Source: Podarcis muralis (Eukaryota). From it: a stretch of 64,000 nucleotides of DNA. Below the pieces are notes generated by a model that saw only the letters and a list, made by a program, of their open reading frames with translations, ran no database searches and was not told the DNA's origin. The stretch is taken from NCBI RefSeq assembly GCF_964188315.1, contig NC_135664.1:20398001-20462000 (forward strand), written 5' to 3'. Position numbers and translations under genes: made by a program. This document shows, one piece after another, positions 10,816 to 57,927 of this stretch; position 1 is the first letter of the stretch; each line of letters begins with the position of its first letter.

Positions 10816-10988
10816 TACTGCTGAATATGCATTGGCCCACCTATATGCTGTCAGCCCTCAAGTTAAAGTTGCTACGTGATTGCAGCTGGCCTTAAGAGAA
10901 GAACATAGCTAGCAATTCTGAATGAAATTCAATGGAACAGGCTCCTGTGATCTTTGATCTCTAATAACATACTTCTATCAAGTGTGTA

Positions 10989-14030: not shown

Positions 14031-14218
14031 GGTTGGTTTAGCCCGGGCCAAGTCTTTGTGTTGGACGAATACTGTGCTCGTTATGGTGTGAGGGGCTGTC
14101 ACCGCCATCTGTGCTACCTGAATGAATTGATGGAACACTCGGAGAATGGCGCTGTCATTGACCCAACCTTGCTCCATTACAGCTTTGCCTTTTGTGCTTC
14201 TCATGTTCACGGCAACAG
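14031..14218 (+). CDS. CADPS2: CADPS2 exon ([30 protein letters not shown]...CASHVHGNR)
   Basis: Acceptor ttttacag|GGT, donor AG|gtattt; 188 nt; within ORF 13995..14255. Confidence 0.97.
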
Positions 14219-15729: not shown

Positions 15730-17075
15730 TCTAAACCATCCTAAATATCTTTGCAGAAGCTTACGGAAAGCTTGGCCTATCGCTCAATAGCTAAAAAAAC
15801 CCAAAGTGCTGCACCAACAAGCACAAAACAACCCCTCTGCAGCACCATAAATTCAATTCAGTGATGTAATGTTGGAAAATGCTGATCATTTTTCCTACCT
15901 AGGCAGTTATCTTTCTTGGCCAACATCGATGCCAAAATCCATCATTGCCTGAGCTTTGTGAGTGCAGCTTTCTCTTGATTGAAGCATAGAGTGTTTGAGG
16001 ATCGGGACGTTTGCAGGGAAACCACAATGCTTGTTTACAAAGCTATTGTACTACCAACTTTGTTTGTGAAACATGGACCCCTTATAAATGCCATCTCCAA
16101 CTCCTTGAAAGATTCCATCAACGGTGTCTTCCAAAAAATTTACATATCACTTGGGAAGAAAGGCAAACTAATTTCATTGTACTGGAAGAAGCAAAGATCA
16201 CCAGTGTTGAAGCAATGAGTATTCAACATCAACTTGGTTATACTGGTCATGTTGTTTGGATGCCTGATTATCATCTTCCAAAGCAACTACTCTATTCCCA
16301 ACTTAAGAATGGAAAGCGTAATGTTGGTGGACAACAAAAGAGGTTTAAAGATGCTCTCAAGGCAAATCTTTAAAAAATAAACACCAACAACTGGGAAACA
16401 CTGGCCTGTGAGCACTTCAATTGGAGAATAAAAGGTAAAGGTACCCCTGCCCGTACGGGCCAGTCTTGACAGACTCTGGGGTTGTGCGCCCATCTCACTT
16501 AAGAGGCCAGGGGCCAGCGCTGTCTGGAGACACTTCCGGGTCATGTGGCCAGCATGACAAAGCTGCATCTGGCGAGCCAGAGCCACACACGGAAACGCCG
16601 TTTACCTTCCCGCTAGTAAGCAGTCCCTATTTATCTACTTGCACCTGGGGATGCTTTCGGACTGCTAGGTTGGCAGGCGCTGGGACCGAGCAACGGGAGT
16701 GCACCCCGCCGCGGGGATTCGAACCGCCGACCTTTCGATTGGCAAGCCCTAGGCGCTGAGGCTTTTACCCACAGCGCCACCCACATCCCTATCAATTGGA
16801 GAATAGCCTCTGCCAAAGGCGTCATGGACTCTGAAGAAGCAAAAACTCAGAACGAAAGGGAGAAACGAGCTAAGGGGAAGGCACGTTTGGCAAATCCTCA
16901 CCATGATCAACTCCTGCCCAGAAACCTATGTCCCCGCTGTGGAAGGACATGTGGATCCAGAATTGGCCTCCAAACCAACTTAAGAATGCGCTGTTAAAAG
17001 CATATTCATGGAAGGCAATCTTATTCGGCTATGAGTGATTGTCCAAGAAAGAGAAAAAGAAAGAAAGAAAGTACT
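15730..17075 (+). mobile_element. RTE-clade (BovB-like) LINE 3' part, interrupted by a Sauria SINE
   Basis: RT C-terminal remnants LENADHFSYLGS and HLPKQLLYSQLKNGKRNVGGQQKRFKDALKANL, CCHH-type tail, (gaaa)n end. Confidence 0.85.
16431..16789 (-). mobile_element. Sauria SINE, full length, 14-bp TSD
   Basis: TSD tcaattggagaata at 16417-16430 and 16792-16805. Confidence 0.92.
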
Positions 17076-17797: not shown

Positions 17798-19276
17798 GGA
17801 TAGTGACCTCACTGCTGCAATAAAGGTGTTCTGCTTTGATAATATATTCAGTTCGCTTTTCTACAATTGCAGGTTTAAAAAATGGTGGATAATCCAGCTT
17901 TCAGTCTATATTTTTGCAGCAGTGTGAGAGAGAAAATTCTAGTCCATGGGTGCACTCTTTTGACTGGAGGTTTGGGATGGGATTAAGGTTTTATGGCACA
18001 GATAATTTTACTCATATGCCAAGTTACATGGTAGTCATTTAAAGATCCAACTCAGCTTTAGGAAAAAGAAAGAATTCACGAGTACACCAACTTATCAAAT
18101 TTGGCTCAATGTTAGATTGTTTTTTTTAGGCAGCCTATTTCTCTGCCCTTGACTTTATGATCTCTTGTATCTTATACAACTACTTTTTTTTGCGCCACCT
18201 TGGACACAAGCTCAACAATTGTCTGTTCCCTTTGATGTCCTCCCATTCTTGTCCATATGCCTGACTTACAAATGGAGTAGCTTTGATTGTTAAATGTTTT
18301 TCATAGGTTTCCTTTGCACTGATACAGTGCTCATATAGGCAGCCCTGGCCTCTTTGTGAAATGATTGCTAATTGTCAAGGTCTCCTGCTCTCCCTGTCAA
18401 TGCAACTCCTTTCCAACTGAAGGCAAAAGCACTTGGTTGCCACCCTGACTTGCATTTCCATTTTCCCAGGCATTTTCAGCAACTTCCTGATTAAAGGAAG
18501 CTTTTTTAAAAAATTAATAAATCAAGTGCTCAACAATAATTGTACCCAAATAAAGAAGCAACATTATAGGACCCAAACAAGAATGGAGTCTAAAATAGTT
18601 CTAGAGTAAAACATTTGACATAAAATTCCTGATTTATCCACTGGTGTCCAAAGCTGATTGAAAAACTAAATAAAAATAGCAACAAACACCAGTATAAAAA
18701 TACAAAATGGCCATACACAAGGGGAAAACATATAAGAGGATTCCATAATCTCCTATTAAACCTGCAGAATCCAGTTCAGTGGAGGTGGGATTAACCGGAA
18801 CTCCAGAGATTAAGAAGACCGAAGGATCTCTTCAAAAGTTTACCTATAGGGACACCTTTTTCCAAACGGGAAATTACTCTGCTTTTATACAACTCTGACC
18901 ATTTTAATTTACTTGCTGTAGGGAAACTGGATCACCACTCTAGTCTTCACCAACGATTCATCTTCACCTCTCCTGCCAACAGCTTTCTCAAACAAACTAG
19001 GCATCTCTGTATTAAACCGGAGGAGGAAATTTTGTTTGGTGCACTTTCTAGGTAGTTTCTAGTCTTACATCCATCTGAAAAAAGGTCAGAACAGAGAGGA
19101 AAACAGCAAGAGTGAGAGAGGGAAAAGAGTCACCAGAAGGAAAGAAAAAAGGTAATCGCATTTCAAAATGCAAGAAGTTACCAGGTCTCTCTTCATTATT
19201 TTTTATTTCTTATTTTTTTAATAACTTTTAAAAAAAGTTTTTACATCAGGTTTAGGGTTCATAAAAGTAAAATATA

Positions 19277-19638
19277 AGGTAAAGGTAAAGGTACCCCTGC
19301 CCGTACGGGCCAGTCTTGCCAGACTCTAGGGTTGTGCGCCCATCTCACTCAAGAGGCCGGGGGCCAGCGCTGTCCGCAGACAGTTCCGGGTCACGTGGCC
19401 AGCGTGACAAAGCTGCATCTGGCGAGCCAGCACAGCACACGGAACGCCGTTTACCTTCCCGCTAGTAAGCGGTCCCTATTTATCTACTTGCACCCGGAGG
19501 TGCTTTCGAACTGCTAGGTTGGCAGGCGCTGGGACCGAGCGACGGGAGCGCACCCCGCCACGGGGATTCGAACTGCCGACCTTTCGATCGGCAAGTCCTA
19601 GGCGCTGAGGCTTTAACCCACAGCGCCACCCGCATCCC
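19277..19638 (-). mobile_element. Sauria SINE, full length, 14-bp TSD
   Basis: TSD aaaagtaaaatata at 19263-19276 and 19641-19654. Confidence 0.92.
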
Positions 19639-21586: not shown

Positions 21587-23936
21587 GCAGGTGTGGATCT
21601 TCTGCTGGCATCATGGAGTCACTGGGTTGGGCTCTGGCTCCACCCTGCTCATGAGGCAGAAGAAAAAACTCCTTGGGGAAATGGGCGGCTCCCAGTCAGG
21701 TTGTTTTGTTTTGTTTTTTGCTCCTGCCTAAACGATGCAGTCCTGTCATGATTGGCTCCTGCTTTTACTCAGGCTAGTTTTGCCCTTCTCCTTTGGAGTT
21801 TCCTTCTCCAAATCCTGAAGCCTTCCCAGAGAAGCCACTCTAGGACATCATGTGTTGATGGAAGTCATGGTTCCTGCCTTTGGCACCTACGGAGCGTGCT
21901 AAGAAGACCTGTGGGTGTCAGAGGCCACATCAACACTTCCTGTTGCTTCAGTTGGCCTGCTGCCTGCAAACCCTTTGCATGGCTGAGCATGGAACCACCT
22001 CAGCAGCCAGCGGCCTTCCGTGGTATAGACCTCCCGCAAGGCTAAACAGAAGCAGAAACACATGGAGGCTTCTGAAAGCATCTCCTGCAGCAGCAATTAG
22101 GTCACCACAAGGCCCTTCCCTTCCTCAGTGACCCACAGCAGACCCAGCCACTATTGGCAGTCCCTTGGGAAGGGATTCAGATGACAGCCACCCAATCCTG
22201 GCACAGGCTTTTCATTCCACCCCCCACCCCACCACCTCAGATGAGGATGAATTTGTGGGGTTTCTGGAGGCTTCTTCTTCTATCTCAATCCCCTAGGAAA
22301 CCAACCTCTCTCCCAACACATCCAAGACCAGCGCCCACAGGGGGACCTCTTACCACCAGAAATTATTCAGCAAATTAAAGAAGCCATCCCCGAGGCTCCT
22401 CCTCCTGCGTTGTAACTGAAGAAGAGTAGTGGAGTGATGGTTTCATGCTAGAGGAACAGACCTCTGCCCACTTGTTCCAGGGTGCCCATTGTTGCAAGTC
22501 TTGAGCATCTCTCAGTCTGATGACCCTGTTATCCCAAAAGAGGCTAAAGTGCTACCAGAGCCACAAACTTCCACCAGATTTGTTCCAACCCCAACAGACA
22601 ACAGGCAATTGAGGAAAATGGGATATCTCTCTCATATATATACTTGGCAAACTATACACTTGATTCGCCCACAGATTCCATCAACGGTGTCTCCGAAAAG
22701 TTTTACACATCACTTGGGAGGACAGGCAAACTAATAGTGTACTGGAAGAAGAAGCAAAGATCACCAGTGTTGAAGCAATGATTCTTCAACATCAACTTCG
22801 TTGGACTGGTCATGTTTTGCGGATGCCTGATGATCATCTTCCAAAGCAACTACTCTATTGCAAACTTAAAAATGGAAAGCGTAATGCTGGTGGTCAACAA
22901 AAGGGGTTTAAAGACTGTCTCAAGGCAAATCTTAAAAAATGTATAATCTACAACTGGGAAACACTGGCCTGCGAGCACTCCAATTGGAGAACAGCCTTTA
23001 CCAAAGCTTTGAAGAAACTCGAACTCAGGATGCAAGGGAGAAACATGCTAAGAGGAAGGCACGCCACGATCAACTCCCGCCCAGAAACCTATGCCCCCAC
23101 TGTGGAAGGACGTGTGGATCCAGAATTGGCCTCCACTGTCACTTACAGACTCATTGTTAAAATTGTGTTTATGGAAGACAGTCTTACTCAGCTATAAGTG
23201 ATTTTCCACTGTACATATTTCAGGAGAATCCAACACCCAGGTAGATAGGCTAAGTCAAACCAAACTAGATCTAGGGGGAATAGATGCTGCATCATCTGAT
23301 CTTCTCTCAGCTTCAAAACTGCTACGGGCTCTTCATGGTGGACCTCTTCATGAACTAGGCCACCCAGCAACTGCCAGAGTTCTTCTCACTTCCAGCAGAT
23401 ATTTGTAGGGTTGCCACTGGGATATCCCCTAGCACCTTTACAAGGCGCTATATGATTGATTTGCATTCATCTGCTGAGGCTTTCTTTAGGTGCAAGCCCT
23501 GCCACAGTAACCTAGTCTACAGTTGGGGTCCACCCTAACTGGATAAACTCTGGTAGATCCCAATCCAGTGACCCCCATGGTGCCAGTAAGAGATAGTACG
23601 GTTCGTACTCACCTCAACTGTAGAACTCTAATGGCATCATGAGGTCACTGGAGCCCACACCCTAACATGGACTACAACATGCCTCGTTTATTACTGCATG
23701 TTCTCATGCTCTTTGGGCAGCTGGTACTGTTAATGTATAAGGAGAAAGTGGGCTTTTACCATTTGTGACATCGATGACTGTTGGAGTTTGGCTGCAAAAA
23801 TGAGGGAGAGCCTCCCATTTTCCCCGAAGAGTTTTTTCTCCTGCCTTGTGACCATGGTGGAGCCAGAACCCAATCCAGTGACCTCATGATTCCAATCAGA
23901 GATCTACACTTCAGGTGAGTACCAATCATACTTTTC
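21587..23936 (+). mobile_element. Internally deleted DIRS1-like tyrosine-recombinase retrotransposon
   Basis: ITRs 21587-21693 and 23804-23912; ICR about 23555-23655; RNase H remnant VHISGESNTQVDRLSQ (23211-23258); YR remnant DICRVATGISPSTFTRRYMIDL (from 23398). Confidence 0.8.
22620..23197 (+). mobile_element. RTE-clade (BovB-like) LINE 3' fragment nested in the DIRS relic
   Basis: ORF 22778..23197 LRWTGHVLRMPDDHLPKQLLY; CPHCGRTCGSRIGLHCHLQTH zinc finger; homologous to 15730-17075. Confidence 0.85.
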
Positions 23937-38858: not shown

Positions 38859-39083
38859 CAGTAGTACCTCAGTTTTTGAACGTAATCCGTTCTGGAAGAC
38901 TGTTCGACTTCCAAAACATTAAAAAAACCAAGACGCAAAGGGCGATCTGCAATTTCAATGGAGACAATTGGGGGGGGGGGACTCAGCGGAAGCCGTTTGA
39001 CTTCCAAAAAGCGTTCAAAAACAGAAGCAATTACTTCTGGGAACGTTCTGCATCCGAGACGCTCAAAAACCGAGGTACCACTT
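38859..39083. mobile_element. Tc1/mariner MITE
   Basis: TA|cagtagtacctc...gaggtaccactt|TA. Confidence 0.7.
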
Positions 39084-40999
39084 TATTCCAATTTCTTCCA
39101 TCCTGACTTGTGCAGATATTTTAAAATAAAACTTGCATTCTGGGGCAGAGGGTTGCCATATCATGAATGTAGAGAAAAACCGTAAGTAAGCAAACCTTGG
39201 GCTCCCTCCCCGTATTGTCTCTTTCACCTAATGAAATCCGCTCTCAATCCAAACCTTTCACATCCTTGTAGCTGGGTTGTATTTGCGGTTTCTTATCTCA
39301 TCGTCTCTGACACGCACCTGTAGTTTACTTCAATTAAAGTCCAATTAGCAGGATAACCTGTGCTTCCAGGAATGGGATTGGGGGGGGTCGCGGCAGCCAG
39401 AGTGCTCTATGCACCCAGTGTCTTTGCCTGTCCTCACATTCCATGGGGAAGCGAGTGCCAGACTTCTAGGCAAACTTCAGATGGGAGCCTGATTCTTCTT
39501 CCAACTGAAGAGGAATGCAGATAATGAAATTCCCCCATCAATATCTGATTATCTCCATCTCGCTCGCTCTCCCTCCTGTTATGTTGAGAGAGTCTCCATT
39601 CTTGGCGGAGGTAATTTGCAACGTCTTCATACTAAGCATAACAATAACATGAGTTGTTTAAAATTCATAATTTGGTGGAGGCCATTGTATAGATTATTAT
39701 GTTTCTAATCACATGCTCAGTATATTCTGCAACAGTTTATTTTTAGCCTGGCTGAAATTGTAGTCACAAATAATACCAAAAGCAGGGGAGAGGAATGGTG
39801 CCGGTTGTATTTAACAATTCGTTTTAACTTATTTTCCCGTCTCTTCACCATCACTGACAAACATGAGTTAGCCAATCTCTTGAGTGATTAACCAAAAAAA
39901 TAAAGCCATCTCATCACTATAGCAACCAATATTATATCATGGGAATAACAACATGAAAGCACCTCAGTAACCAGTTTATCATAATTAATTAAGATATCAT
40001 GTTGTGTTTAAATGAAGGAGGATATATGTGGATCTTTCTGAAAATGAGAAAGATACCTTTTCACCTTCAGCTAGCATCCTATGCATGCTTGCAGCAGGGG
40101 GCTCTTGCTGTTCAATTATCTAGAGTTTTTAACAAGCTTGTTTGGCATAATTGGTGTAAAAATAGAAAGTTTCTAAAAGGCGGCACCCAAGCTGGGCTGA
40201 GAGTCAAGCAAAGTAATCTTAGTGTGGAGCTCATTGTTTACAGGTGATATAAATATGTCATTCCTTAGATCCTCTGAAACTTTACAGAAATGTGAAAAAG
40301 GAGTCACATTACAAAGTACAATGTATTTTTTTATTTTATTTTTTGTCGTGGGGACTAGGTATGAAAGCTCACAGACCAGGGCATGAGCTGCAGCCAAGTA
40401 TATCTGAGTGCCTGAGTGGAAGACTGGTGGGGCGGAGGCAGGATCCTATATGTGCCCCCCTTGAGTTGTGGGGAAGAAAAGCATGAACAGAATTAGTTCT
40501 TGAAGGAAACAGGAATTCCATATTTACACGCCCAGGGAAAAAAAGGCCATATAACTGGCTCAGATTATTGCGTTTAAGTGATTTGAGTCAACAGTGTAAA
40601 GTACAAAAACCTAAATGGAAACAAAAGATAAGTGAGGCCTAACTCTCTCTTTAATTAAAGGTTTCTTTCATACAGTAAATAACAACAAAAATATCACATT
40701 ATTTAATCCAGAAACATGGGAAGACTTGAGATTGGTAGTGTTAATAAATTCCCACATTCAGCTTCTGGAATCATGAGTGAGGGAGAAAAATGTCTCTCTT
40801 TCCACTATCCCCACATGTTGCTCGCTGTCCCACTGTCTAGTTTTTTCTCTAAACAGCTCCAAATACTGTATCCTTTCATATGGATATGCATATGGAACTT
40901 TCATATGGAGTGCATATGGAACTATGCATTGCAATTCCTTTTCAAAGTGAACATGCCCATAGGGCCTAATTTTTCAGTTCCAAAATTTTACAAACAGAA

Positions 41000-41600
41000 T
41001 CCTGTTTTTACAGAGATTTCTGTACAGGCATTTCTTCTTTTCCTCAAACATTTATTAACTGTAAGCTTGTCTATAAACATGGGGTCCCATGTTTTTCTCC
41101 TTCACTGGCCAAGAGTTAGCCAACAAGCTGATTTCCATGCTTTAGCCAGTGAAGCGCATGCTATTGTTAACATGTTCACAACTAACACAACACGTTCCTT
41201 TCAAACTTGCCCCTTTATTGCTCCCAGTAACATTGCTGGGGAATTAATTTGCCTCACATACCATAATTATATCCTTGATACCTTTTACAATAATAAGTCA
41301 CTATTGTTTTTCCTCTCTTAGATCTCCAATACATATTGGATATATTTTGACACGTTTTTGCTATTCTCATAAGCATTAAGTACCAGTATTCTTCCAAAAT
41401 ATTTTCAATTTTCTTCTGTCATTGAAAGACTGAATTCTGTCACATGCTTTTATCCCCAAGACACTCCTTTGAGTTGTATCCAGGAGTATTCTATAGATTT
41501 TTGATGTCAAACCTTTTGTTATATCAGCTTTTTCATAAGATGTCAGTGGTCTCTTTATGTTCACAAAGGCCCTTTGAGACTATTTTTTTTTTGTAGTAAG
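41000..41600 (-). mobile_element. Old L1-clade ORF2 C-terminal fragment, approximate limits
   Basis: Minus strand reads LVVNMLTIACASLAKAWKS...W..MFIDKLT, like the L1 fragments at 55292 and 49915. Confidence 0.5.
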
Positions 41601-41670
41601 TAACAATAAGTGAAATATTAATAATAATATACCCTGTAGTTATTTGGAAATAGTTTCTAATTTGTAGATA

Positions 41671-42017
41671 CAGTGGTACCTCGCAAGACGAATGCCTCGC
41701 AAGACGGAAAACTCGCAAAACGAAAGGGTTTTTGGTTTTTTGAGTTGCTTCGCAAGACGATTTTCCCTATGGGCTTGCTTCGCAAGACGGAAACGTCTTG
41801 CAAATTTGTTTCCTTTTTCTTAACACCGTTAATACAGTTGCGACTTGACTTCGAGGAGCAACTCATAGAACGCGGTGTGGTAGCCTTTTTTGAGGTTTTT
41901 AAAGACTTTGGTGATTTTTGAAGCTTTTCCAAAGCTTTCCCGACACCGTGCTTCGCAAAACCCGCAAGACGAAAAAACTCGCGGAACGAATTTATTTCGT
42001 CTTGCGAGGCACCACCG
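41671..42017. mobile_element. Young CpG-rich Tc1/mariner MITE
   Basis: TA|cagtggtacctcgcaagacgaa...ttcgtcttgcgaggcaccaccg|TA; internal tcgcaagacg repeats. Confidence 0.8.
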
Positions 42018-42809
42018 TAACAGGAAAGGATAGCTGTAGACAGTGATTTCTTTATCTGGATTGATGATGCAGATTTCAGTCAGGGCAGGGGTGAAGTTTT
42101 GCAGCCCTGCAGAATTGCTATCAGAAATACAACAAATCAACACAAGCAAAACTATGTGAATTTGCTTAGTATGTATAATTCATTCAAGTTGCACAATCCA
42201 GTTTTTCTTGGCATACAATGTCAGGATATGTTTTTAATTCAGAGTACCCACAGTCATCAAATACTACCATTTTCTTAGCAAAATAGATACCATACCTGAC
42301 GGACGGCCTACAGAAGTTTGGTTGACCCAGTATCAGTTCAGTTGGTTGCTGGTGTCAATGGAATGTTTAAAAACGTTGATCTTTTTCTCTGATTTACATC
42401 TGCAGTACATTTACTCCAATCATTATTTTTGGTTGTTAAAAAACATCCAATTATTAATCGCAGAAAATGGGTTTTCTTGTTGGTAACAGAGCATATTTCA
42501 TAGAAGTTAACAAAAACACTGTTCAGGCTTTTCCATATGAAGAAATATAATGCCCATTATAGGATAGAAAATAAAGTCACAGACATCATTTATTTTCTTG
42601 CTGATCCCATATAAAAATTATGTTGTGAACTTGATTATCGGGATGAATTTGTTGTCTTTTTAACAGGATGTTAAAGAGCTTGCATATTTTTGGCTGCTAG
42701 AATAAACTGATTTCTTATACATTACAGCTTGACTTACATAATGGAGGTAAACTAATACTACTATTTTCTTCTTCTCCATCCTCCCTTTTTTCGTGCCCTT
42801 TCACTTAAG

Positions 42810-42830
42810 CTACAAATGAAAAGGATCCAG
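42810..42830 (+). CDS. CADPS2: CADPS2 21-nt alternative microexon (inserts ATNEKDP between AKTE and ETLNQ)
   Basis: Long polypyrimidine tract, ttaag|CTACAAATGAAAAGGATCCAG|gtgact; phase 1 to 1; resembles recalled CAPS1 ENQKDA at the equivalent position. Confidence 0.8.
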
Positions 42831-42955
42831 GTGACTGCTGTGTTAATTGTGTGCATGTATGCATGCATGTATTTTAAGTGTTCATTACGGCTTTATTAAT
42901 TGTACAATGTAACAACAGCAAAATCAGTGCATGCTTATTCAGAAGTAAGACCTTT

Positions 42956-43316
42956 AAGGTAAAGGTAAAGGTACCCCTGCCCGTACGGGCCAGTCTTGCC
43001 AGACTCTAGGGTTGTGCGCTCATCTCACTCTATAGGCTGGGAGCCAGCGCTGTCCGCAGACACTTCCGAGTCACGTGGCCAGCGTGACAAGCTGCATCTG
43101 GCGAGCCAGCGCAGCACATGGAACGCCGTTTACCTTCCCGCTGGTAAGCGGTCCCTATTTATCTACTTGCACCTGGGGGTGCTTTCAAACTGCTAGGTTG
43201 GCAGGTGCTGGGACCGAACGACGGGAGCGCACCCCGCCGCGGGGATTCGAACCACCGACCATGCGATCGGCAAGTCCTAGGCGCTGAGGTTTTACCCACA
43301 GCGCCACCCGCGTCCC
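42956..43316 (-). mobile_element. Sauria SINE, full length
   Basis: Reverse-complement homologue of 10989-11347. Confidence 0.9.
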
Positions 43317-43722
43317 TTACCTTTATCTAAGTATATATGGGGCCTCTGGCTAAGTCACCAGGACCGTTGTATCAAAATGGAAGGAGAGCCCTCTCTATGT
43401 GTTGTAGTCAAGGAGAACTTGTGACAAGGTTGTGGATCTCTGCCAAGTAGCCCCTCCACATCCAGTTCAAATGTTGGAAAGGTGGGAACCTTCATACAGA
43501 CTTCCATGTGATCTACAGTTCCATATCACGTGTCAGCCTTTTCATGCGAAGGCTTCCTCTTCCCCCTAGACATTTGCACTGGGCATGCAAGAGCCAAGAT
43601 GACATATTCTCCATAACTGTTAGCATTACGCTTGAAGAGGGCTAATGTCTATCACAATTCAAGTTATCCCACCGGCAGACGCATTCTAGGGGGAAGTTAT
43701 TACCATGGACAAAATATTTTAC

Positions 43723-43869
43723 AAGATTGTATAAATGTTTCAGCTTCACTTATAGAAGATTACATCTCGCACATAACAAATTGACCACAGTATAAAAATA
43801 GACCATTTAATGATGACAATACAATACGCAGTGTTTTGTTTTCTAAATGAACAATTAAAATGGCACTGC
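43723..43869 (+). repeat. Inverted repeat arm 1 (partner 46543-46689)
   Basis: 147-bp gap-free alignment to reverse complement of 46543-46689, about 17 mismatches by hand count. Confidence 0.85.
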
Positions 43870-43984
43870 AGTAGCTTTACACTTATATGTTACCTCACGG
43901 ACCACCTCTCTTCATATAAAATATCCTGGAATCTGCATTCACCATCTGTGGCCTTCCTTCATGTGCCTCTTCCATGTGAGATCC

Positions 43985-44265
43985 AGAGGGTGGCCGCATG
44001 AGAAAAGGCCTTTTCTGCAGTGGCCCCCTGCTTGTGGAATGCTCTCCCCAGGGAGGTTGTCGTGCGTTTTCATTATATATATTTTAGGCGCCAGGTGAAA
44101 ACTCTTCAACCAGGCATTTGGCTGATTAATATCCTACAGCCTTTTAAATGTGTCTGTGGGAAGGGGGGGAGTATTGTTTTGTTGTTTTGGTTTAATCATT
44201 TACATGTGATTTATTTTGTATTTTATTCTGTGAGCCACTCTGAGATCTTTTGATGAACAGTGGTA

Positions 44266-44307
<42 letters not shown>
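43985..44307 (+). mobile_element. Older L2 3' fragment with (AAT)n tail
   Basis: aggccttttctgcagtggcccc...tggaatgctctccc; gtgagccactctgag near tail. Confidence 0.65.
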
Positions 44308-44308
<1 letters not shown>

Positions 44309-44449
44309 TCAGTCTACACTGGGGAACCGTGCAGGGCCAAAATCTCCTTGTTTTTCCAACAGTTCTATGGAAGCTGAAACAACCACCAATTTGATCACCA
44401 GCAGTGTTCTTTCTGCAGAGAAATATCTAGGGGTAGCAAATGTGAGGTA

Positions 44450-44690
44450 CAGTGGTACCTTGGTTGTCCAATGCCTTAGTTGCCGAACAAATCGGCTCCC
44501 GAACATCGCAAACCCGGAAGTGAGTGTTCCAGTTTGCAAACTTTTTTGGAAGCCGAACATCTGATGTAGCTTCCAGTTGGCTGCAGGAAGCTTCTGCAGC
44601 CAATCAGAAGCCGTGCCTTGGTTTTTGAACCATTCCGGGAGTCGAACAGACTCTCATTACAGATTAAATTCAAGAACCAAGGTACCGCTG
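44450..44690. mobile_element. Tc1/mariner MITE
   Basis: TA|cagtggtacctt...aaggtaccgctg|TA; same family as 62459-62646. Confidence 0.75.
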
Positions 44691-44892
44691 TATTCCAGTA
44701 TTGGGCTGGTCATTTGGGATCTTTTCTTTTGGGGAAAGCTTCCCCCCCCCCAAGCCATCCCAGAACCGGTTTCAGTCATGTGACTCCCCATTCTCATCAA
44801 GTGTATGTTGAAGCAATTTTTTTTAAAAAAAAATCATTTGTAGAGATTGACAAATGGAGCAGGGAGGAGAGCAGGAATGGACCATCTCCAGA

Positions 44893-45301
44893 TGTCAGGA
44901 GTGCATGCAGGAGCCAGGTCCATTGGTAGGGCTTTGCAGGACTGGGGCTTTCCTAAGTTTGTTCTGAAGAGGCAAGGTGCGGCCGCACAGGTGAGGCCAA
45001 TTGGTAACTCACAGCACCTGATGGCAGGAGCTGGTAAGGGGTATAAGGTCAGCATTTCCCTTTGGCTCTTTGCCACAGCAACACGCTTCCTGCCATGCTG
45101 TGTTTGGCTTCTTGACTCCTTGCTTCCTCATCCTCGGACCCTTGGCTTCTTGACTCCTGGTTTCCTGACCCTCAGACCCTTGGCTTCTTGACTCCTGGCC
45201 TCCAGACTCTCATTCCTGCTCCCACCCTGCCGTCTTGCCCCAGGTCCTGTCGTCCTCCACCAGGACTTCCACCGTCCGTAAACCGTAAACCGTCCGTGAC
45301 A
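44893..45301 (+). mobile_element. Solo LTR, second copy of the 3862-4293 family
   Basis: TGTCA...TGACA; near-TSD ccaga/ccagg. Confidence 0.85.
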
Positions 45302-46542
45302 CCAGGGAATTTCAAAGGTGGAGGAATCACAAAGAGACAAAGGTCTTGATAAGGGGAGGAAGTAGCCTTACAAGCTTCCACCTCTTGCTTTCTCTTTGGT
45401 CTGCAGGCTGAAGGTTCCTCATCCCTGATCTTTTGCCTCCACTGACTACTGGCAGCATCTCTCCCGGGTACCCGTCAGTCTTTCCCAGCCCTGCCTGCAG
45501 ATGTCTGGGATTAAGCTAGTGACTTTTTGAATGCAAAGCATGTGCCTCTGCCACTGAGCCACTTGGTTAATATTACGAATAGATTAAAATTTCTCCTGCA
45601 TGTCGAGGTCCCCCAGGCCACCCCTAAATAAATCACAATTCACACACAATTTTTGTTTAAGATTTTTAGCATAATTTTGGCCATAGCTTTATTAAATTGC
45701 ATAAATGTGAGTGGTTGCTTAGGCATTGGTTCTGACTATCTGTCCCCTGCCCCGAGACAGAACTGACTTCTGGATTCCAGTGAAAGCCAGTCAGGGAAAA
45801 CGATATTGGGGAATTAACGGAATTCCCTTTCTGCAGCAGCATTGGAGGGGCAGGCACCGCCAATCCTTACCCCTCCACCCACCAATTTTTTCACCAATGC
45901 CTAACTGCAACCTTACAAGTTGTGACGTTTTGCTACGCAGTAGGCAAAAACCAAATGGCACCAGCCAATCAGCCAATTGGACAAAATTCCTACCAGGCCC
46001 CTGCCCGAAAGGCAGATGACCCCATGACAGGCATAGCAAGGATTAGGGAGGGTGGGCAGGCGATCCGATGCACACAGCAAAAGAGCCCAGTCAGTGCTGT
46101 GTGACTTGGGATAAAGTTAAAAAAAGGAAAAAAAGAAAAAGAAAATTCAGAATTTTGAAGCACTGGAGAATTATAAAGTAAAATGTGTAATTTTCCAGAA
46201 AGTTCCACTGCCCACCTCACCCTGGTCTGAGGTTGACTTCTTTGAAGCTCATTTTCCTTCAGCAGACAGTAGCCTAACAGCATTTATAACCAGTCTCAAT
46301 TGGTGGATTTCTCACCAGACTATGTGTTCCATCTAGTGTCAGCTCACAGACAGTATTATTTTATTTACTTATTCCAGTGCTTATCTTTCCTCAACACTAC
46401 ATAATGAGATTAAGGGAAGAGCAGGGCAAATGGCAGTAAGTTTAATTTCCACCCTCCAAACAATTTCTATCCACTAAAGTGAGATGCCATCAATGGAAAA
46501 AAAATGCCACTGTTGGACCTTTGGGTAACATATAGGTGTAAA

Positions 46543-46689
46543 GCAGTGACATTTTAATTGTTCATTTAGAAAATAAAACACTACGCATTGTATTATTATC
46601 ATTAAACGGTCTATTTTGCTATTGTGGTCAATTTGTTATGTGCGATGCGTAATCTTCCATACGTGAAATTGAAACATTTATACAATCTT
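46543..46689 (-). repeat. Inverted repeat arm 2 (partner 43723-43869)
   Basis: See arm 1. Confidence 0.85.
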
Positions 46690-46929
46690 CAAAAACATTT
46701 TTCCGCAGTAGGAACTTCACCCCAGAATGTGGTGGGGTACTACATTTTATGTTGCCGCTTTTGTGATGTTGCTTCAGCGTGTTTTCTTAGTAGCGGCTAG
46801 AATTTCAGGGAACGGGTTGATTAGAATTTCAGTCCTCTGAACTTTGAAGGGGACCTTTCCTTGTTCATGTGGCCAGAGCAGAACTGGAGCAGCAATGTTC
46901 TCTGAAGTTCACACACCTATGAGTGAACA

Positions 46930-46930
<1 letters not shown>

Positions 46931-46987
<57 letters not shown>
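46931..46987. repeat. (GT)n(GA)n microsatellite
   Basis: Direct inspection. Confidence 0.95.
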
Positions 46988-46989
<2 letters not shown>

Positions 46990-47829
46990 CACACACGTGT
47001 GTGCGCAAATGTGCACATCTAGCATACTGATTGGTGTCTTGCCTCTTTGATACGTACACGCCATGCCAGGCACAATGGATTTCCTCCCTTTTTGTGCGCG
47101 TGGACTCTTGGTGCTACTGCCGAATCGGCACAGAGAAGGGTTGCCTTGGTGATGTCCCCGAGGTTAAGGTCACTTTCCATTTTCAAAGACGGCTAAGGTG
47201 GTGATGTGATAGCTTTGAGTGATATTTGTAGGAGTGGTGAAAAGGGAGCTGCTGACAGGGTTGTGCTCCCATTTCTCCTCCTCCCTGGGAGAGGCACGGT
47301 TTCTCTAACAAGGTTTTTTTTCCCTGTTCTTTTCAAAGCATTTTGATCCCGGTGCAAATTAAATTACAAGCTTAAACACTCTTTGCATTTAATCGCAGAG
47401 TAGGGGCTAGATCTGCATTGCTTCTACCTGCATGGCACCCTTGTAGTTTCCACCTAGTTCCTGGGGAGTAGAGGGCAGCTCCAGGGGAAGAAAAACTATT
47501 CTGTGGGGGCCTAATAATGAGTTCTATGCATAGAGAATCTTAGCATCTCTGTGGATGTGATCAAAACTTGGGTGGTACAATATAGTTAGCAAAGCAGAAG
47601 CTGATGACTATTACAGAATTCGTTGCGAATTCTGCAAAATCCCAACCATATTGGGCTTTAAAACATGTTTATAGCTCTCCTGATTGCTAGAGCAACCATA
47701 AAATATGGGAGCAAGTTTTACCTTGAAGTTCGTTTATATAATCACAATGGGACTGTCTGCGGTGGTGATGTCAGTGCCCAGGACTGACTCAGTTACATGT
47801 CACCAACTCTCGTGGTTCCATACTAAGTA

Positions 47830-48072
47830 CAGTGGTACCTCAGGTTAAGTACTTAATTCGTTCCGAAGGTCCGTTCTTAACCTGAAACTGTTCTTAACCT
47901 GAAGCACCACTTTAGCTAATGGGGCCTCCTGCTGCTGCCGCGCCGCCGGAGCACGATTTCTGTTCTCATCCTGAAGCAAAGTTCTTAACCCGAGGTAATA
48001 TTTCTGAAGCACTATTTCTGGGTTAGCAGAGTCTGTTGTAACCTGAAGCTTATGTAACCCAAGGTACCACTG
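47830..48072. mobile_element. Tc1/mariner MITE (family of 10304, 54940, 62824)
   Basis: TA|CAGTGGTACC...GGTACCACTG|TA. Confidence 0.88.
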
Positions 48073-49423
48073 TACCTCCAAATTCTCCCTGTTTTTCCTT
48101 TTTCTAGCCTTATCTGTCCAGAGCTGGTTTATAAAACACTCCTGAGAAAATAATAAATGCTTTTGTCATTTCCCCTTTTTTGGCATTGTAAGCAATCCAG
48201 TAAATACTTTGAATCGACTCAGGAGTTTGACACTACCTTTCTTCCTTGAGCCCCTTTTCCAAAAAAAATTCCAGGTAAATATTGTAGATGAATTAGTCCC
48301 AGATCCTTAACACATGTGCACATAGTTGGAAAACAAAATGAAAATTCTACCCAAATCTCCTCATTTTGAGACCAGACGAATGCAGGCAAATGAGTACATT
48401 GAATTTATGCATATCTGGGTTTACTGACTAAGCGATCTGGCTTTTTTAATACAAAATTCAAATGCATAAATACAAAAGTAGACATGACATTATCATTTGG
48501 TTAGCTTTCGTCCCTTGCTGCCCCAGAGTTAATTTTTGCACATTTTCCATACCCATTCTCTTTTTCATACTTCATCCTTGGTTTGTTTGTTCATTTTAAC
48601 AATAATGAATGTTTATAGTTGCATATCTACCATATCTACACTGGGGGAAAAGTGCTGTTCATTAGGACTGGGATAGTTCTGGGATCATGACATTGCCAGA
48701 TTTTAGCTTCTGTTCGCTGATGAAATTAGCCAGATATCTAACTGTGAACGAGTGCAGCGGTGCAAATTTGCTGGGGGAGGGGGATGGAGAAAAGAAAAGA
48801 AAGAAAAAGGCTGACAAAGTGAAGGACGAAGGGCAGGCTATGGCCAGGAAAAAGGACAATGAGAGACTTCTGTCCAGACAAATGACTCAAAAGCTTGCAC
48901 CTCTTTAATGAGGTCTTTTACAGACAAGTTTTCTAAAAAGAATGGCTGCATGTAAATGCCCTCCAAGCTCACAAGGACTTGTCTGAAGGAAAACAAGAGC
49001 ACTAGAGGCACTATTGAACTGAAGGCAGAGTAGAGCCATTTGTGTATGTGGTGAGAGGCCTTCTGCGGTAATTTAAAGCTCTTAGTGCATGTTCATTTCA
49101 CTGAAAGAACAAAGGGCAGAATCGGTGAGTTGGCCGGTGGCATATATCTTTGTATTAGATGCTGGTTTTCGTTCAACGGCACAATAATCAAATACACGAG
49201 CAAAAGGCTTGTCTGTGCTAATGTGCAAATCCCGCAACCTTGCTGCGTTCATACAAGCAAGAATTTGCTGAGTCTGTGATGCTTCATCACTACCAATTCA
49301 ACAATATGAACTCAGCCATTTCATCGCGTTGACCTCTGATTCACGCACCCGGACCCTCCCCCCCCTCTCTGGAGGGCCAGAGCTCCTTCATATCTGGTTT
49401 AGAGTGTTAGCCAAAGGCCCACA

Positions 49424-49670
49424 ACTCGCAGACTTAACATACAGAATAAGAGAACAAGAAAAACATACGTTTGAAGAAGATTGGAAAACATTTATTGAAT
49501 ACATGGGAAATAATTGTGTACAGCTGAAAACGCTGGCAGCATTAAGATAAATTCAACAGTGCAGATAAGTTTTGATGGATGTAATGAATACTGAATGGTA
49601 TGGTTTTTGTAAAATATGCAGGGATCTATGACTATCTTAAACTGTAAAACGGAAAATGGAATAAAAATGA
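49424..49670 (+). mobile_element. L1-clade 3' fragment
   Basis: LADLTYRIREQEKHTFEEDWKTFIEYM...LAALR* then 3' UTR. Confidence 0.65.
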
Positions 49671-49674
49671 TATG

Positions 49675-49912
49675 CAGTAGTACCTCTGTTTTCAAGTGTG
49701 TTGGAAGCCGAACGTTTTGGTTTTCGAACACCAAAAACCTGAAAATAATTGCTTCAGTTTTTTGAATGCGCCTCAGAAGTCTAACGGCTTCTGCTGCATG
49801 TTTTTTTCAATTTTTCCAATTGAACTTGCACCTTTGCGCCTTGGTTTTCAAACGTTTCGGAAATCGAAATGTCTTCCAGAACAGATTATGTTCAAGAACC
49901 AAGGTACCACTG
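49675..49912. mobile_element. Tc1/mariner MITE
   Basis: cagtagtacctc...aggtaccactg|TA. Confidence 0.7.
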
Positions 49913-49914
49913 TA

Positions 49915-50101
49915 TGCAATAGAGTATCATCCAAAGTCTGCAAACAGTGCAGTTATAGCGTGAGGTGCAAATGAAACTCATAACCCACCTACTTTCAGCA
50001 GCCAGAAACACCATAACCAGACACTGGAGAGACCGGTCAGGAGTAAGCATGGACCAATGGTACCAAATAGTATGGCATGCATGCATGCATGCATGCATGC
50101 A

Positions 50102-50148
<47 letters not shown>

Positions 50149-50149
50149 A
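49915..50149 (+). mobile_element. L1-clade fragment followed by (GCAT)n(AAAT)n
   Basis: LITHLLSAARNTITRHWRD...DQWYQIVW reading; compound microsatellite about 50075-50149. Confidence 0.55.
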
Positions 50150-50943
50150 TTCTTCCTGTAGAGCACAATTTTTCACCCACTGTAAATGCCAATGTAGGCA
50201 GCTCAATTTGAACATAACACTAGGCATCCCTTCTACATCTCCAGTGTCGTCGTGGGGAGGTAATTTGTGGCTTCCATCTTAGATTAGGTGCAGTTCAGCA
50301 TGTCATCTGAGCACTAAGCTGAGGTTAATCGTAACTGTGGTTAGTGAAAACTTGCCCGTCTCAAAAACTGTGGTTTGAAGTTGGTTTGTTTCTATCGGTG
50401 GTAGGTAGTATTCGCCACGGTTTGTCCGGGTTTGAGCGACATGGCAGGCTGTGGTTGATCAAAAACAGATACAGATGCTTCCAAACTCCTTCTGATGACC
50501 ACGTCGGAGGGAGAAGCAAGGAACGCACAAGCCTTGAGGAAAGCTAGTTTCATTCCCAAACCAAGGCATTGTGTGATAGAGGAAAAAAACAAGCAACTAG
50601 CCTCTGCTTTTGTTCTTTAGCTCACAATGGAGAGGATTCAGACTTGGGTGTGGCAAAAGTTGAGCATCCGATGTCCCAGTGCAGATGTATCTGTTACTTC
50701 TGAATTAGAAAGGGCTCATAGAGTGGTGTTTTCGGGGGATGGGTTAAATATTTTTTGCACGCATGCAATCTGGTCATAACAACATTACCATTATCTATAT
50801 TAAAAGCATGGCTGATGTGCTTGAAAGTGTCAGCCTTTTAAGTCATCGAATTCTGTGTTGTCTCACTTCTCTGGAATGTTTTCTGTTCCCACATTTTCCT
50901 AGCTGTGATCATCCTATCATTTGTGTGTTCCTTTTCTCTGCAG

Positions 50944-51047
50944 AGACACTGAACCAAGCGTCTCCTTCTGTAAAGCTGGAAGAGGTTATTCATTTAGCAG
51001 AGCTCTGCATTGAAGTCCTACAGCAGAACGAAGAGCACCATTCAGAG
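50944..51047 (+). CDS. CADPS2: CADPS2 exon (ETLNQASPSVKLEEVIHLAELCIEVLQQNEEHHSE)
   Basis: Acceptor ctctgcag|AG, donor GAG|gtgagg; 104 nt, phase 1 to 0. Confidence 0.95.
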
Positions 51048-52448: not shown

Positions 52449-52457
52449 GGAAAAGAG
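52449..52457 (+). CDS. CADPS2: CADPS2 9-nt microexon (GKE)
   Basis: ccctcag|GGAAAAGAG|gtatgt; phase 0 to 0; matches recalled mammalian HHAE-GRE-AFAWW. Confidence 0.85.
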
Positions 52458-52964: not shown

Positions 52965-53314
52965 AAGGTAAAAGGACCCCTGACCGTCAGGTCCAGTCGC
53001 AGACAACTCTAGGGTTGTGGCACTCATCTCGCTTTACTGGCCAAGGGAGCCGGCGTACAGCTTCCGGGTCATGTGGCCAGCATGACTAAGCCGCTTCTGG
53101 CAAACCAGAGCAGCACACGGAAACGCCGTTTACCTTCCCGCCGGAGCAGTACCTATTTATCTACTTGCACTTTGACATGCTTTCGAACTGCTAGGTTGAC
53201 AGGATCTGGGACCGAGCAACGGGAGCTCACCCCGTCGCGTGGATTCGAACCGCTGACCTTCTGATCGGCAAGCCATAGGCTCTGTGGAGTAGACCACAGT
53301 GCCACCCACGTCCC
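52965..53314 (-). mobile_element. Sauria SINE, full length
   Basis: Reverse-complement homologue of 8934-9287. Confidence 0.88.
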
Positions 53315-54779
53315 ATATGTATATGTATCCCATATAGAACACTCAAACCTACCTAGAGCCAGGAGATCCATGAAGGCTTCCAACGTGGCTGCAATTGTCC
53401 ACCAAGCAGGATAAGGGAATCTGAAAAGAATCTCATCTAGCAGGAGGCAACCCGTGTCACAGATGGTCCCCCAGGGAGAAGCTGCAGAGAAGGGATAGAT
53501 GCCGTGTGTCACTTCAGTCTTGAGCAGAGAGTCAGCAAATTGGAGCCACTGCTGAGTATTGTTCTGTCGACTGTGTAGCAAGTGATGCCATATAGTATAA
53601 TACACATTTTAAACAATAGTCTGGAAAAAAAGAAATCAGCCTTTAATCTCATACAATGACTTTTCTCTCTCTCTTCCTCTCAGAGTGCATGTGATAAATC
53701 ACTAATTGCATTCATTTTGGTGTCTTGTTATATGGAACAACGTTGTGTCTATGATATTTGTCTGTCTAGTTTAACCACTTTATTCATAGGCATCAGTGGG
53801 TCAAGAGAATTTTTCCAATACAATTGAATTCCCTCCCCCCCACACACACTATATTGTTCCCTCCCCCCCCCCCCACGCACTATATTGTTTCTCTGCAAGG
53901 ATATATAGAGATGGGAAAGAAATTGACTGGTTTCCTGGGCTGCATTGTGTGTTGCTTTTAGTACATGCTCAAAATGAGATATTTAGTAATGAAAGCAAAG
54001 CAAGATTGGGGAGAAGATTATATAAAGGGAAATCTTTTAATGCCTTTTTCTCCCAATTTCAGCTTTTGAGCTAATTAATTAGATGGTTATTTATATAGTT
54101 TGATGTTCTTCCTCTTAATTGATTTCATTTTTGCAGTATTTTTATCTGAGATTTCTAGTTAGAGGAAGGAAGAATCTGACCTCTGGTTTTCACATAGGCA
54201 CCGGTTATACTTTTTGATGCAACCAATTACCATTTTCTTCAGTAACAGGTAGAGAATGGTCCGGTCATTGTAAGAGCTAACCGATCTTGGAAAATACTTT
54301 TTCAGCTGTCAACAATATTCCCTTTCTAGCTGCAGCCATTAAACCCATGCCAAAAATTACCAAAGTCATAAAAGAGTCAAGGATATGAGTGACACCTATG
54401 TGGACATTTTTAGTATCTCAGTGCTTCATTACTCTTAAGAGTCCTGATTTATTAGCAGATATGTCCAAGTACCTGTGGCTATCATTCATATCTACTGTAG
54501 TCACAATGATATGTTACTTCTAATAGCTACCGTTAAGGAATTCCTTATCAGTCATCTACAATGTTGTTGTTTCAGGGGGGGAAATGCCACAATGTTGTAT
54601 ATCAATATTTTGTAATTATCCAGGGGAGCATATATCTCCATAGCTGATACCGGTGAAGTATGCAAATGGTACATAGGAATATAAGAATCTGCCATTTACC
54701 AAATTGGACCCATTAATCAATCACAAAAGATCAGTCGGTAGAGCAGGAGACTCTTACTCTCTCTTTTTTATATATATAA

Positions 54780-55973: not shown

Positions 55974-56251
55974 CTCTAGAACCTGGTGACAGAGTTTTCC
56001 AGCCCTAGCTGGACATGTCAATAATTGAACCAGAGAGGAGGTCTTCTGCATTCAGAAGTTCGTGGAGCTAGTGCGCATCTACATCTCATTTTCAGAGTCA
56101 ACCTACACATTAAAACAGTCTCGTAAAAGCCACTTTAAGAACAAGCATACATTCGTTACGTGGCAGCTAGAGAAGGGCCATTCTGACCATTTCAGTTTCT
56201 CTCTGTTTTTCTATTTTCCAATATAAGTTCAGGTCTCTGCATTTCTCCATT

Positions 56252-56548
56252 AAGGTAAAGGTAAAGGGACCCCTGAGCATTAGGTACAGTCGTGACAAAT
56301 TCTGGGGTTGCGGCGCTCATCTTGCTTTATTGGCCAAGGGAGCCGGCATACAGCTTCCGGGTCATGTGGCCAGCATGACTAAGCCACTTCTGGTGAACCA
56401 GAGCAGCGCACGGAAATGCTGTTTACCTTCCCGCCGGAACAGTACCTGTTTATCTACTTGCACTTTGACGTGCTTTCGAACTGCTAGGTTGGCAGGAGCA
56501 GGGACCGAGCAACAGGAGCTCACCCCGTCACGGGGTCACCCACGTCCC
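56252..56548 (-). mobile_element. Sauria SINE with internal deletion in the tRNA-like head
   Basis: caccccgtcacgggg joined directly to tcacccacgtccc. Confidence 0.85.
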
Positions 56549-57770: not shown

Positions 57771-57927
57771 GCCTTTGCTTGGTGGCCAGATTTGCTGGCT
57801 GAACATGGGGAGAAATTTTGGTCTCTGTTTACGGTTGACATGGATTCCGCACTGGAAGCACAGCCACAGGACTCCTGGGATACTTTTCCTCTTTTCCAGT
57901 TGCTTAACAACTTCCTACGAAATGACC
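57771..57927 (+). CDS. CADPS2: CADPS2 exon ([25 protein letters not shown]...[10 protein letters not shown])
   Basis: Acceptor gatgcag|GCC, donor C|gtaagc; 157 nt; within ORF 57762..57962. Confidence 0.96.

What the first reader, a model, noticed from the sequence alone, without database searches (positions are those of the whole stretch)
42745..42935. 21-nt CADPS2 microexon (ATNEKDP) with a neural splicing signature
Seen: actaat branch-point candidate, about 45 nt of pyrimidine tract with a TGC about 15 nt before the AG, then ag|CTACAAATGAAAAGGATCCAG|gtgact. Phase 1/1 fits the flanking exons and gives AKTE-ATNEKDP-ETLNQ. Four TGCATG motifs follow (42852, 42860, 42864, 42928). Established: upstream UGC (SRRM4/SRRM3) and downstream UGCAUG (RBFOX) promote neural microexon inclusion. 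From recall, CAPS1 has ENQKDA and mouse CAPS2 a shorter GPAEK here. Inference: a neuron-switched insert in the MUN/DUF1041 region, possibly closer to the ancestral form than the mammalian one, and easily missed by annotation.
Basis: partly seen in the sequence, partly recalled or inferred. Interest (0 to 1): 0.75.

Follow-up and report, generated by a model that had tools for sequence, protein, structure and literature searches.

The report
Known CADPS2 21-base microexon, lizard copy
The 21-base mini-exon is a real, optional part of the lizard's CADPS2 secretion gene, but public gene catalogues already list it for this lizard genus and for other lizards, turtles, birds and a mammal, so it is an ordinary find whose nerve-cell-specific use could not be tested here.

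Summary
The cassette at 42810-42830 has AG/GT sites and sits in phase 1/1 between exons 36560-36683 and 50944-51047. It reads AKTE-ATNEKDP-ETLNQ.

It is not a chance look-alike. Its pyrimidine tract is unique among 4,289 AG sites in the window. Two or more downstream TGCATG occur at only 0.4% of positions.

It is also not new. Exactly this peptide at this junction is annotated in RefSeq CADPS2 isoforms of Podarcis muralis, P. raffonei and Lacerta agilis, next to skip isoforms. The window's exons match Podarcis CADPS2 at 100%.

Relatives carry:
- ATNEKDP, AANEKDP, ATNRKDP or AKNEKDT in other lizards
- ATAEKDP in turtles
- ATAEKDS in birds
- GPAEKEA in a tenrec
- NQKDA in CAPS1

The exon is therefore ancient and alternative.

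The upstream UGC is uninformative, since 28-42% of all AG sites have one.

"Missed by annotation" holds only for some catalogues. The claim that the lizard form is closer to the ancestor is unresolved.

Side notes:
- The orthologue of the human SRRM3-dependent 9-nt microexon lies at 52449-52457.
- None of 62 snake isoforms carries the 21-nt insert.

Verdict: a correct reading of an already known exon, of low interest.

The parts
36560..36683 (+). Upstream constitutive CADPS2 exon (124 nt, phase 0 to 1), ending in ...TDYAKTE plus a G that starts the next codon.
   Evidence: Pfam MUN positions 1-22; exact match to Podarcis muralis X7, P0417.
42751..42756 (+). ACTAAT, a candidate branch point 54 nt before the AG.
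   Evidence: This is a sequence match only and was not tested.
42764..42806 (+). Long polypyrimidine tract. It contains a TGC at 42794-42796.
   Evidence: Pyrimidine fraction 0.90 at -45..-4, unique among 4,289 AG sites. The TGC is no commoner here than at random AG sites.
42810..42830 (+). The 21-nt cassette microexon (phase 1/1), inserting ATNEKDP. Acceptor AAG|C, donor CAG|GTGACT.
   Evidence: The peptide and junction are identical to annotated isoforms of P. muralis X7-X9, P. raffonei X1, X6 and X7, and Lacerta agilis X14 and X16.
42852..42933 (+). Four TGCATG (RBFOX-type) motifs at +22, +30, +34 and +98 from the donor. The first three lie in one TGCA-type microsatellite.
42943..43317 (+). 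SINE copy inserted 112 nt after the microexon. It marks the downstream limit of the unique flank.
   Evidence: ten related copies in the window, 70-93% identity.
50944..51047 (+). Downstream constitutive exon (104 nt, phase 1 to 0), encoding (E)TLNQASPSVKLEEVIHLAELCIEVLQQNEEHHSE.
   Evidence: (Pfam MUN 44-72, E 2e-7).
52449..52457 (+). Second microexon, in the next intron: 9 nt, GGAAAAGAG (GKE), phase 0/0, with TGCATG at +50.
   Evidence: It is annotated as SEGKE in Lacerta, Zootoca, Sceloporus and Anolis isoforms. The primers for human event HsaEX0012134 lie in the two exons that flank it.

Best explanation
The segment 42810-42830 is a genuine, evolutionarily old cassette microexon of CADPS2 (CAPS2), the priming factor for dense-core vesicle exocytosis. 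When it is spliced in, the split glutamate codon at the exon junction is replaced by Ala-Thr-Asn-Glu-Lys-Asp-Pro-Glu. This adds seven polar residues between the first two conserved sequence blocks of the MUN (Munc13-homology) domain without changing the frame. When it is skipped, the protein reads AKTE-ETLNQ. Both forms are made.

Shown here: the exon anatomy; its identity with annotated include and skip isoforms in the same genus; and its conservation across lizards, turtles, birds and a mammal, with a paralogous insert in CAPS1.

Inferred: recognition of so short an exon depends on the exceptionally strong pyrimidine tract, and inclusion is boosted in neurons by RBFOX proteins bound to the UGCAUG cluster just downstream. 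That is the established position-dependent rule for RBFOX. SRRM3/4 may contribute. I put the exon being real and alternative at about 0.95, and neuron-enriched, RBFOX-assisted inclusion at about 0.55.
For: Anatomy and statistics are.

One unique GT-AG exon chain that includes this cassette reproduces P. muralis CADPS2 X7 residues 521-923 exactly.

The insert is annotated at the same junction in many taxa:
- Podarcis and Lacerta: ATNEKDP
- Anolis sagrei, Sceloporus and Elgaria: ATNEKDP
- A. carolinensis: AANEKDP
- Pogona: ATNRKDP
- Hemicordylus: AKNEKDT
- turtles: ATAEKDP
- birds: ATAEKDS
- Echinops: GPAEKEA
- CAPS1: NQKDA at the same spot

Skip isoforms exist in the same species.

Both microexons in the window have TGCATG within 150 nt downstream, against 0 of 9 other CADPS2 exons.

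The neighbouring 9-nt microexon is reported as brain-specific and SRRM3-dependent in human (bioRxiv 10.1101/2024.06.13.598849).
Against: Inclusion, tissue pattern and alternative status therefore rest on other groups' computed gene models, whose RNA support I could not inspect.

The upstream UGC is at background frequency.

Three of the four TGCATG come from one microsatellite, and a similar (TGCA)n run lies elsewhere in the intron at 50076-50101. Conservation of the motifs in other species could not be checked.

The fold model of the region is unreliable (pLDDT 43), so 'loop between helices' is not established.

Four literature searches found no paper on this particular exon.
Confidence: 0.85

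Rival explanations
1. The exon is real and alternative, but its inclusion is not neuron-specific or RBFOX-driven. It could be included wherever CADPS2 is expressed, set by the strong pyrimidine tract and general splicing factors, or follow a neuroendocrine SRRM3 programme. In that case the TGCATG cluster is a by-product of microsatellite slippage.
For: Three of the four motifs lie in one TGCA-type repeat, and another (TGCA)n run lies at 50076-50101 with no exon next to it. The UGC is uninformative. There are no tissue data. In lacertid models the 21-nt and the 9-nt microexon are never annotated in the same isoform.
Against: Two or more TGCATG within 120 nt is rare (0.4% of positions). Both microexons have the motif downstream, and none of the 9 other exons does. 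In Anolis and Sceloporus models the two microexons do occur together.
Confidence: 0.35
2. It is a chance splice-site look-alike, and the database isoforms that contain it were propagated by homology-based prediction rather than by transcripts.
For: All cross-species evidence used here is from predicted (XP_) models or automatic UniProt entries. I saw no RNA.
Against: The insert differs between lineages in ways that track phylogeny (ATNEKDP, AANEKDP, ATNRKDP, AKNEKDT, ATAEKDP, ATAEKDS, GPAEKEA). Each genome therefore carries its own in-frame copy with usable splice sites, kept open across all amniote lineages sampled. The pyrimidine tract is unique in the 64 kb.
Confidence: 0.03
3. The exon is constitutive in this lizard, and the skip isoforms are annotation artefacts that missed a 21-nt exon.
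For: Microexons are often dropped by aligners. The UniProt P. muralis and P. lilfordi entries and all Zootoca models seen lack it.
Against: NCBI lists both forms within the same annotation run for P. raffonei (X1, X6 and X7 include; X11 skips) and L. agilis (X14 and X16 include; X18 skips). The donor has a mismatch at +5 (GTGACT), which fits a regulated exon.
Confidence: 0.07

Closest known systems
RefSeq CADPS2 isoforms of Podarcis muralis (X7-X9; P0417, P0414, P0413), P. raffonei (X1, X6, X7) and Lacerta agilis (X14, X16)
   Same: They carry the identical junction peptide YAKTE-ATNEKDP-ETLNQASPSVKLEE. All ten window exons translate to P0417 residues 521-923 without a mismatch.
   Different: Nothing at the protein level. 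This is the same exon in the same or a sister species. Those records are computed models, not experiments.
The same cassette in other amniote CADPS2 models (Anolis, Sceloporus, Pogona, Hemicordylus, Elgaria, Trachemys, Mauremys, Lepidochelys, Athene, Chaetura, Echinops)
   Same: Same intron, same phase, and 7 residues with a core x-E-K-D/E-x.
   Different: Residues differ by lineage. Lizards have N, or R in Pogona, where turtles, birds and the tenrec have A/E. None of the 62 snake isoforms seen has it.
CAPS1 (CADPS) insert NQKDA
   Same: It sits between YAKIE and ENVGRLITPAKKLED, the paralogous junction, and shares N-x-K-D (P0208, P0089).
   Different: It belongs to the paralogous gene, and the insert is probably one residue shorter. 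CAPS1 also has a long alternative exon (GKKREMYEHPVF...) here, for which the lizard CADPS2 intron has no counterpart. That NQKDA is a separate exon is my inference from the protein isoforms.
Human CADPS2 9-nt microexon HsaEX0012134 ('exon 19'), brain-specific and SRRM3-dependent (bioRxiv 10.1101/2024.06.13.598849)
   Same: Same gene and same class: a tiny in-frame cassette at the start of the MUN domain. Its lizard orthologue lies one intron downstream, at 52449-52457.
   Different: It is a different exon: 9 nt, phase 0/0, GKE or GRE, after ...NEEHHSE. Its regulation was tested in human cells; that of the 21-nt exon was not.

Membership tests
CADPS2 (CAPS2) gene | Exons encode the CAPS PH and MUN region and are orthologous to annotated CADPS2 rather than CADPS. 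| tested here: met
   Pfam MUN hits. Exons are 100% identical to P. muralis and P. raffonei CADPS2 residues 521-923. CAPS1 differs clearly (ENVGRLITPAKKLED).
Alternative cassette microexon (3-27 nt, frame-preserving) | Length of 27 nt or less, a multiple of 3, AG/GT sites, and an open reading frame in the gene's phase. | tested here: met
   21 nt, phase 1/1, no stop.
Alternative cassette microexon (3-27 nt, frame-preserving) | Both inclusion and skipping occur in transcripts. | tested here: inconclusive
   Both forms are present as computed isoforms in the same species. No reads could be laid.
Alternative cassette microexon (3-27 nt, frame-preserving) | Conserved across species. | tested here: met
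   Seven lizard genera outside Podarcis/Lacerta, three turtles, two birds and one mammal carry a related 7-residue insert. Conservation at the DNA level was not testable.
SRRM4/SRRM3-dependent neural microexon | A UGC-containing enhancer close upstream of the 3' splice site. | tested here: inconclusive
   A TGC lies 12 nt before the AG, but 28% of all AG sites have one within -22..-3 and 42% within -35..-3.
SRRM4/SRRM3-dependent neural microexon | Neural-specific inclusion that depends on SRRM3/4. | not testable with these tools
RBFOX-enhanced exon | (U)GCAUG within roughly 300 nt downstream of the exon. | tested here: met
   Four TGCATG at +22 to +98. Two or more within 120 nt occur at 0.4% of positions. 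Of the 9 other exons, none has one within 150 nt.
RBFOX-enhanced exon | Motif conservation and dependence of inclusion on RBFOX. | not testable with these tools
   No intron DNA from other vertebrates could be reached, and no RNA data were available.

The most novel reading that the evidence does not exclude
The ancient 21-nt CADPS2 microexon, kept in lizards (including Anguimorpha and Iguania, the closest relatives of snakes), turtles, birds and at least one mammal, may have been lost in snakes. None of 62 annotated snake isoforms from at least 14 species carries it, including the X1 models. It may also be missing in amphisbaenians, skinks, monitors or geckos, whose listed isoforms all lack it. 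If so, a conserved insert at the start of the MUN domain of a vesicle-priming factor would be dispensable in a large clade.
Probability: 0.25. Interest if true: 0.4.

Novelty: already known. Interest (0 to 1): 0.18.

Why it matters
For this genome it confirms that reading raw sequence can recover a 21-nt exon correctly. It also fixes the exon map of ten CADPS2 exons and two microexons in the window.

Biologically the exon is ordinary. It is a conserved alternative insert at the start of the CAPS2 MUN domain and is already present in public gene models, so it opens no new question by itself.

Two modest points could interest specialists. First, CADPS2 and CAPS1 carry related mini-inserts at the same junction, which suggests an origin before the two genes split. 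Second, the insert is absent from every snake model seen. What the seven residues do to vesicle priming is unknown and, in the papers I could search, unstudied.

Tried and rejected
**RNA evidence**
- The look-up of sequencing runs found six RNA raw-read runs of the same species label (X12-X17).
I had planned to lay 33300-36900 and read the loose ends at 36683.

**Protein searches**
- A word search with the open stretch around the downstream exon returned only genomic ORFs (exon plus intron read-through) and no transcripts.
- Two of its hits, P0010 and P0015, sit on very many contigs, including metagenomes. I took them for probable human DNA and did not look them up.
- The PDB has no chain covering this region.

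**Structure**
- AlphaFold2 on a 32-sequence alignment gave pLDDT 43. I rejected it as evidence for a loop location.

**Intron DNA from other species**
- The exact look-up of the window's upstream-exon ORF is not in the collection, and the related ORF contigs are only 2-3 kb.
- RefSeq gene ranges are too long for the look-up of encoding contigs, so I did not try it.

**Other checks**
- The bacterial promoter/terminator scan is irrelevant for a vertebrate intron.
- tblastn for a CADPS2 counterpart of the long CAPS1 alternative exon in this intron found nothing.
- The mammalian 'GQCK/GQCE' variants (P0289, P0436) are not a microexon. They are a +9 nt alternative donor of the upstream exon, since the intron itself reads GQC (P0058).

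**Joined sequences**
Exons were searched by reference.
- The only joined step was an in-script frame check of the exon chain against P0417. Nothing was saved or printed from it.

Full report
**Observation**

- The exon is ag|CTACAAATGAAAAGGATCCAG|gtgact at 42810-42830.
- ACTAAT lies at 42751-42756.
- A pyrimidine stretch of about 43 nt ends a few bases before the AG.
- A TGC lies at 42794-42796.
- Four + strand TGCATG lie at 42852, 42860, 42864 and 42928.

The proposed neighbours are real exons with canonical sites.
- 36560-36683 ends after ...TDYAKTE plus one G.
- 50944-51047 starts with AG and continues TLNQASPSVKLEE....
- Both hit the Pfam MUN domain, at profile positions 1-22 and 44-72.

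With the cassette the reading is AKTE-ATNEKDP-ETLNQ. Without it the reading is AKTE-ETLNQ.

**Is it more than chance?**

The intron 36684-50943 holds 397 open, in-phase AG..GT cassettes of 3-51 nt, so a bare AG/GT pair means nothing.
- This candidate ranks first by pyrimidine content upstream (0.90).
- It is the only one that combines at least 0.70 pyrimidine with a downstream TGCATG.
- Across the whole window, 1 of 4,289 AG sites reaches 0.90.
- Two or more TGCATG within 120 nt occur at 0.4% of positions.

Two cautions apply.
- Three of the four TGCATG are one small TGCA-type microsatellite, and a longer (TGCA)n run lies at 50076-50101 with no exon beside it.
- The UGC argument does not survive a background test. 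42% of all AG sites have a TGC at -35..-3 and 28% at -22..-3, and the figures are much the same for pyrimidine-rich sites.

The cassette and its flanks (42500-42942) are unique in the window. A SINE with ten copies in the window begins at 42943.

**What it is**

A search of protein-cluster representatives with the upstream exon gave a partial CADPS2, P0059. I used it, and then Anolis sagrei P0315, as queries restricted to the junction region.

The window's exons are 100% identical, inside exon bounds, to Podarcis muralis CADPS2 isoform X7 (P0417) residues 521-923. P. raffonei scores the same; P. lilfordi, Lacerta and Zootoca are slightly further.

One unique chain of GT-AG exons reproduces that protein. 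This was an in-script frame check only. The chain is:
- ...-2451
- 2725-2925
- 7818-7954
- 14031-14218
- 33399-33500
- 34670-34733
- 36560-36683
- 42810-42830
- 50944-51047
- 57771-57927

The window therefore comes from a Podarcis-like lacertid.

The finding's peptide is already annotated. YAKTE-ATNEKDP-ETLNQASPSVKLEE stands in these models:
- P. muralis X7-X9
- P. raffonei X1, X6 and X7
- Lacerta agilis X14 and X16

Skip isoforms stand beside them: P. raffonei X11, L. agilis X18, the UniProt P. muralis entry, P. lilfordi, and all Zootoca isoforms seen.

**Conservation**

The same junction carries the following inserts:

| Taxon | Insert |
|---|---|
| Anolis sagrei, Sceloporus, Elgaria | ATNEKDP |
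| A. carolinensis | AANEKDP |
| Pogona | ATNRKDP |
| Hemicordylus | AKNEKDT |
| Trachemys, Mauremys, Lepidochelys | ATAEKDP |
| Athene, Chaetura | ATAEKDS |
| Echinops (tenrec) | GPAEKEA |

The lineage-specific differences show that each genome has its own open copy, so this is not one model copied across species.

CAPS1 has NQKDA between YAKIE and ENVGRLITPAKKLED (P0208 and P0089). That last step is inference.

On 'closer to the ancestor', the data are mixed. The lizard N matches CAPS1, but turtles, birds and the tenrec share A there, so N is more simply derived in squamates. The K-D is shared by sauropsids and CAPS1, while the tenrec has K-E.

**How it probably works**

Shown: this is a frame-preserving seven-residue insert between the first two conserved blocks of the MUN domain, and both forms are annotated.

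Inferred:
- An exon this short is recognised thanks to the unusually strong pyrimidine tract.
- The donor is imperfect (GTGACT, with C at +5).
- Inclusion is raised in neurons by RBFOX bound to the downstream UGCAUG cluster, following the established rule that downstream sites enhance inclusion.

An internal control fits this reading. Both microexons of the window have TGCATG within 150 nt downstream, while none of the 9 other CADPS2 exons does.

The second microexon is GGAAAAGAG (GKE) at 52449-52457. The primers for human event HsaEX0012134 sit in the two exons that flank it. That event is described as a brain-specific, SRRM3-dependent 9-nt microexon.

A fold of the region was too poor to use (pLDDT 43). 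No solved structure covers it.

**Comparison with what is known, and novelty**

The exon is the same as the one in public Podarcis and Lacerta models and is orthologous to those of other amniotes. It is already known at the catalogue level.

I found no paper that treats it.
- The mouse splice-variant study lists exons 11, 22 and 25 as alternative and does not mention it (PMC1853102).
- The microexon papers that mention CADPS2 concern 9-nt events.

'Easily missed by annotation' is true only for some catalogues.

- Exons were searched by reference.
- No contig that I took for human was fetched.

**Verdict**

The regulatory reading is plausible but untested, and half of its sequence argument (the UGC) is uninformative. 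The novelty claim is not upheld. Interest is low.

Noticed in passing
window 52449-52457: A 9-nt microexon, ag|GGAAAAGAG|gtatgt (GKE, phase 0/0), lies between exons 50944-51047 and 57771-57927, with TGCATG at +50. It is annotated as ...HHSEGKEAFAWW in Lacerta, Zootoca, Sceloporus and Anolis, and as GRE or ARE in mammals and turtles. It is flanked by the two exons that hold the primers for the human SRRM3-dependent event HsaEX0012134.
   Followed up: partly
protein sets (no window coordinates): None of 62 annotated snake CADPS2 isoforms (at least 14 species, X1 models included) has the 21-nt insert. Elgaria, Iguania, lacertids and cordylids do have it. Rhineura (7 of 7 isoforms), Tiliqua (4 of 4), Varanus (2 of 2) and the gecko isoforms seen also lack it. 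Only 1 of the 62 snake isoforms has the 9-nt microexon, so thin brain RNA support could explain the gap.
   Followed up: partly
window 2725-2925: [quoted passage not shown] It is missing from 2 of 19 lacertid isoforms. By its PH-domain position it may correspond to the alternative exon 11 of mouse CAPS2c (PMC1853102).
   Followed up: partly
window 42943-43317; related copies at 19265-19638, 10988-11347, 16431-16790, 52965-53317, 8933-9283, 56247-56535 and others: A SINE family of about 360 nt has ten related copies in 64 kb (70-93% identity). One copy is inserted 112 nt after the microexon, directly behind the fourth TGCATG.
   Followed up: partly
window 50076-50101: A (TGCA)n microsatellite gives a run of overlapping TGCATG on both strands, about 850 nt before the acceptor of exon 50944-51047. 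It shows that such motif clusters can arise by slippage.
   Followed up: no
P0289 (Ictidomys), P0436 (Hipposideros), P0058: Some mammalian CADPS2 models read YAKIE-GQC-K/E-TMNQ. The intron after the upstream exon itself reads GQC, so this is a +9 nt alternative donor (or a model artefact), not the microexon.
   Followed up: partly
window 15999-16370 and 22664-23194: Two long open stretches share a retroelement-like motif (HQRCL.K.LHITWE.RQTN...). The second lies in the region that another note of this scan (s1-152902) calls a collapsed DIRS retrotransposon.
   Followed up: no
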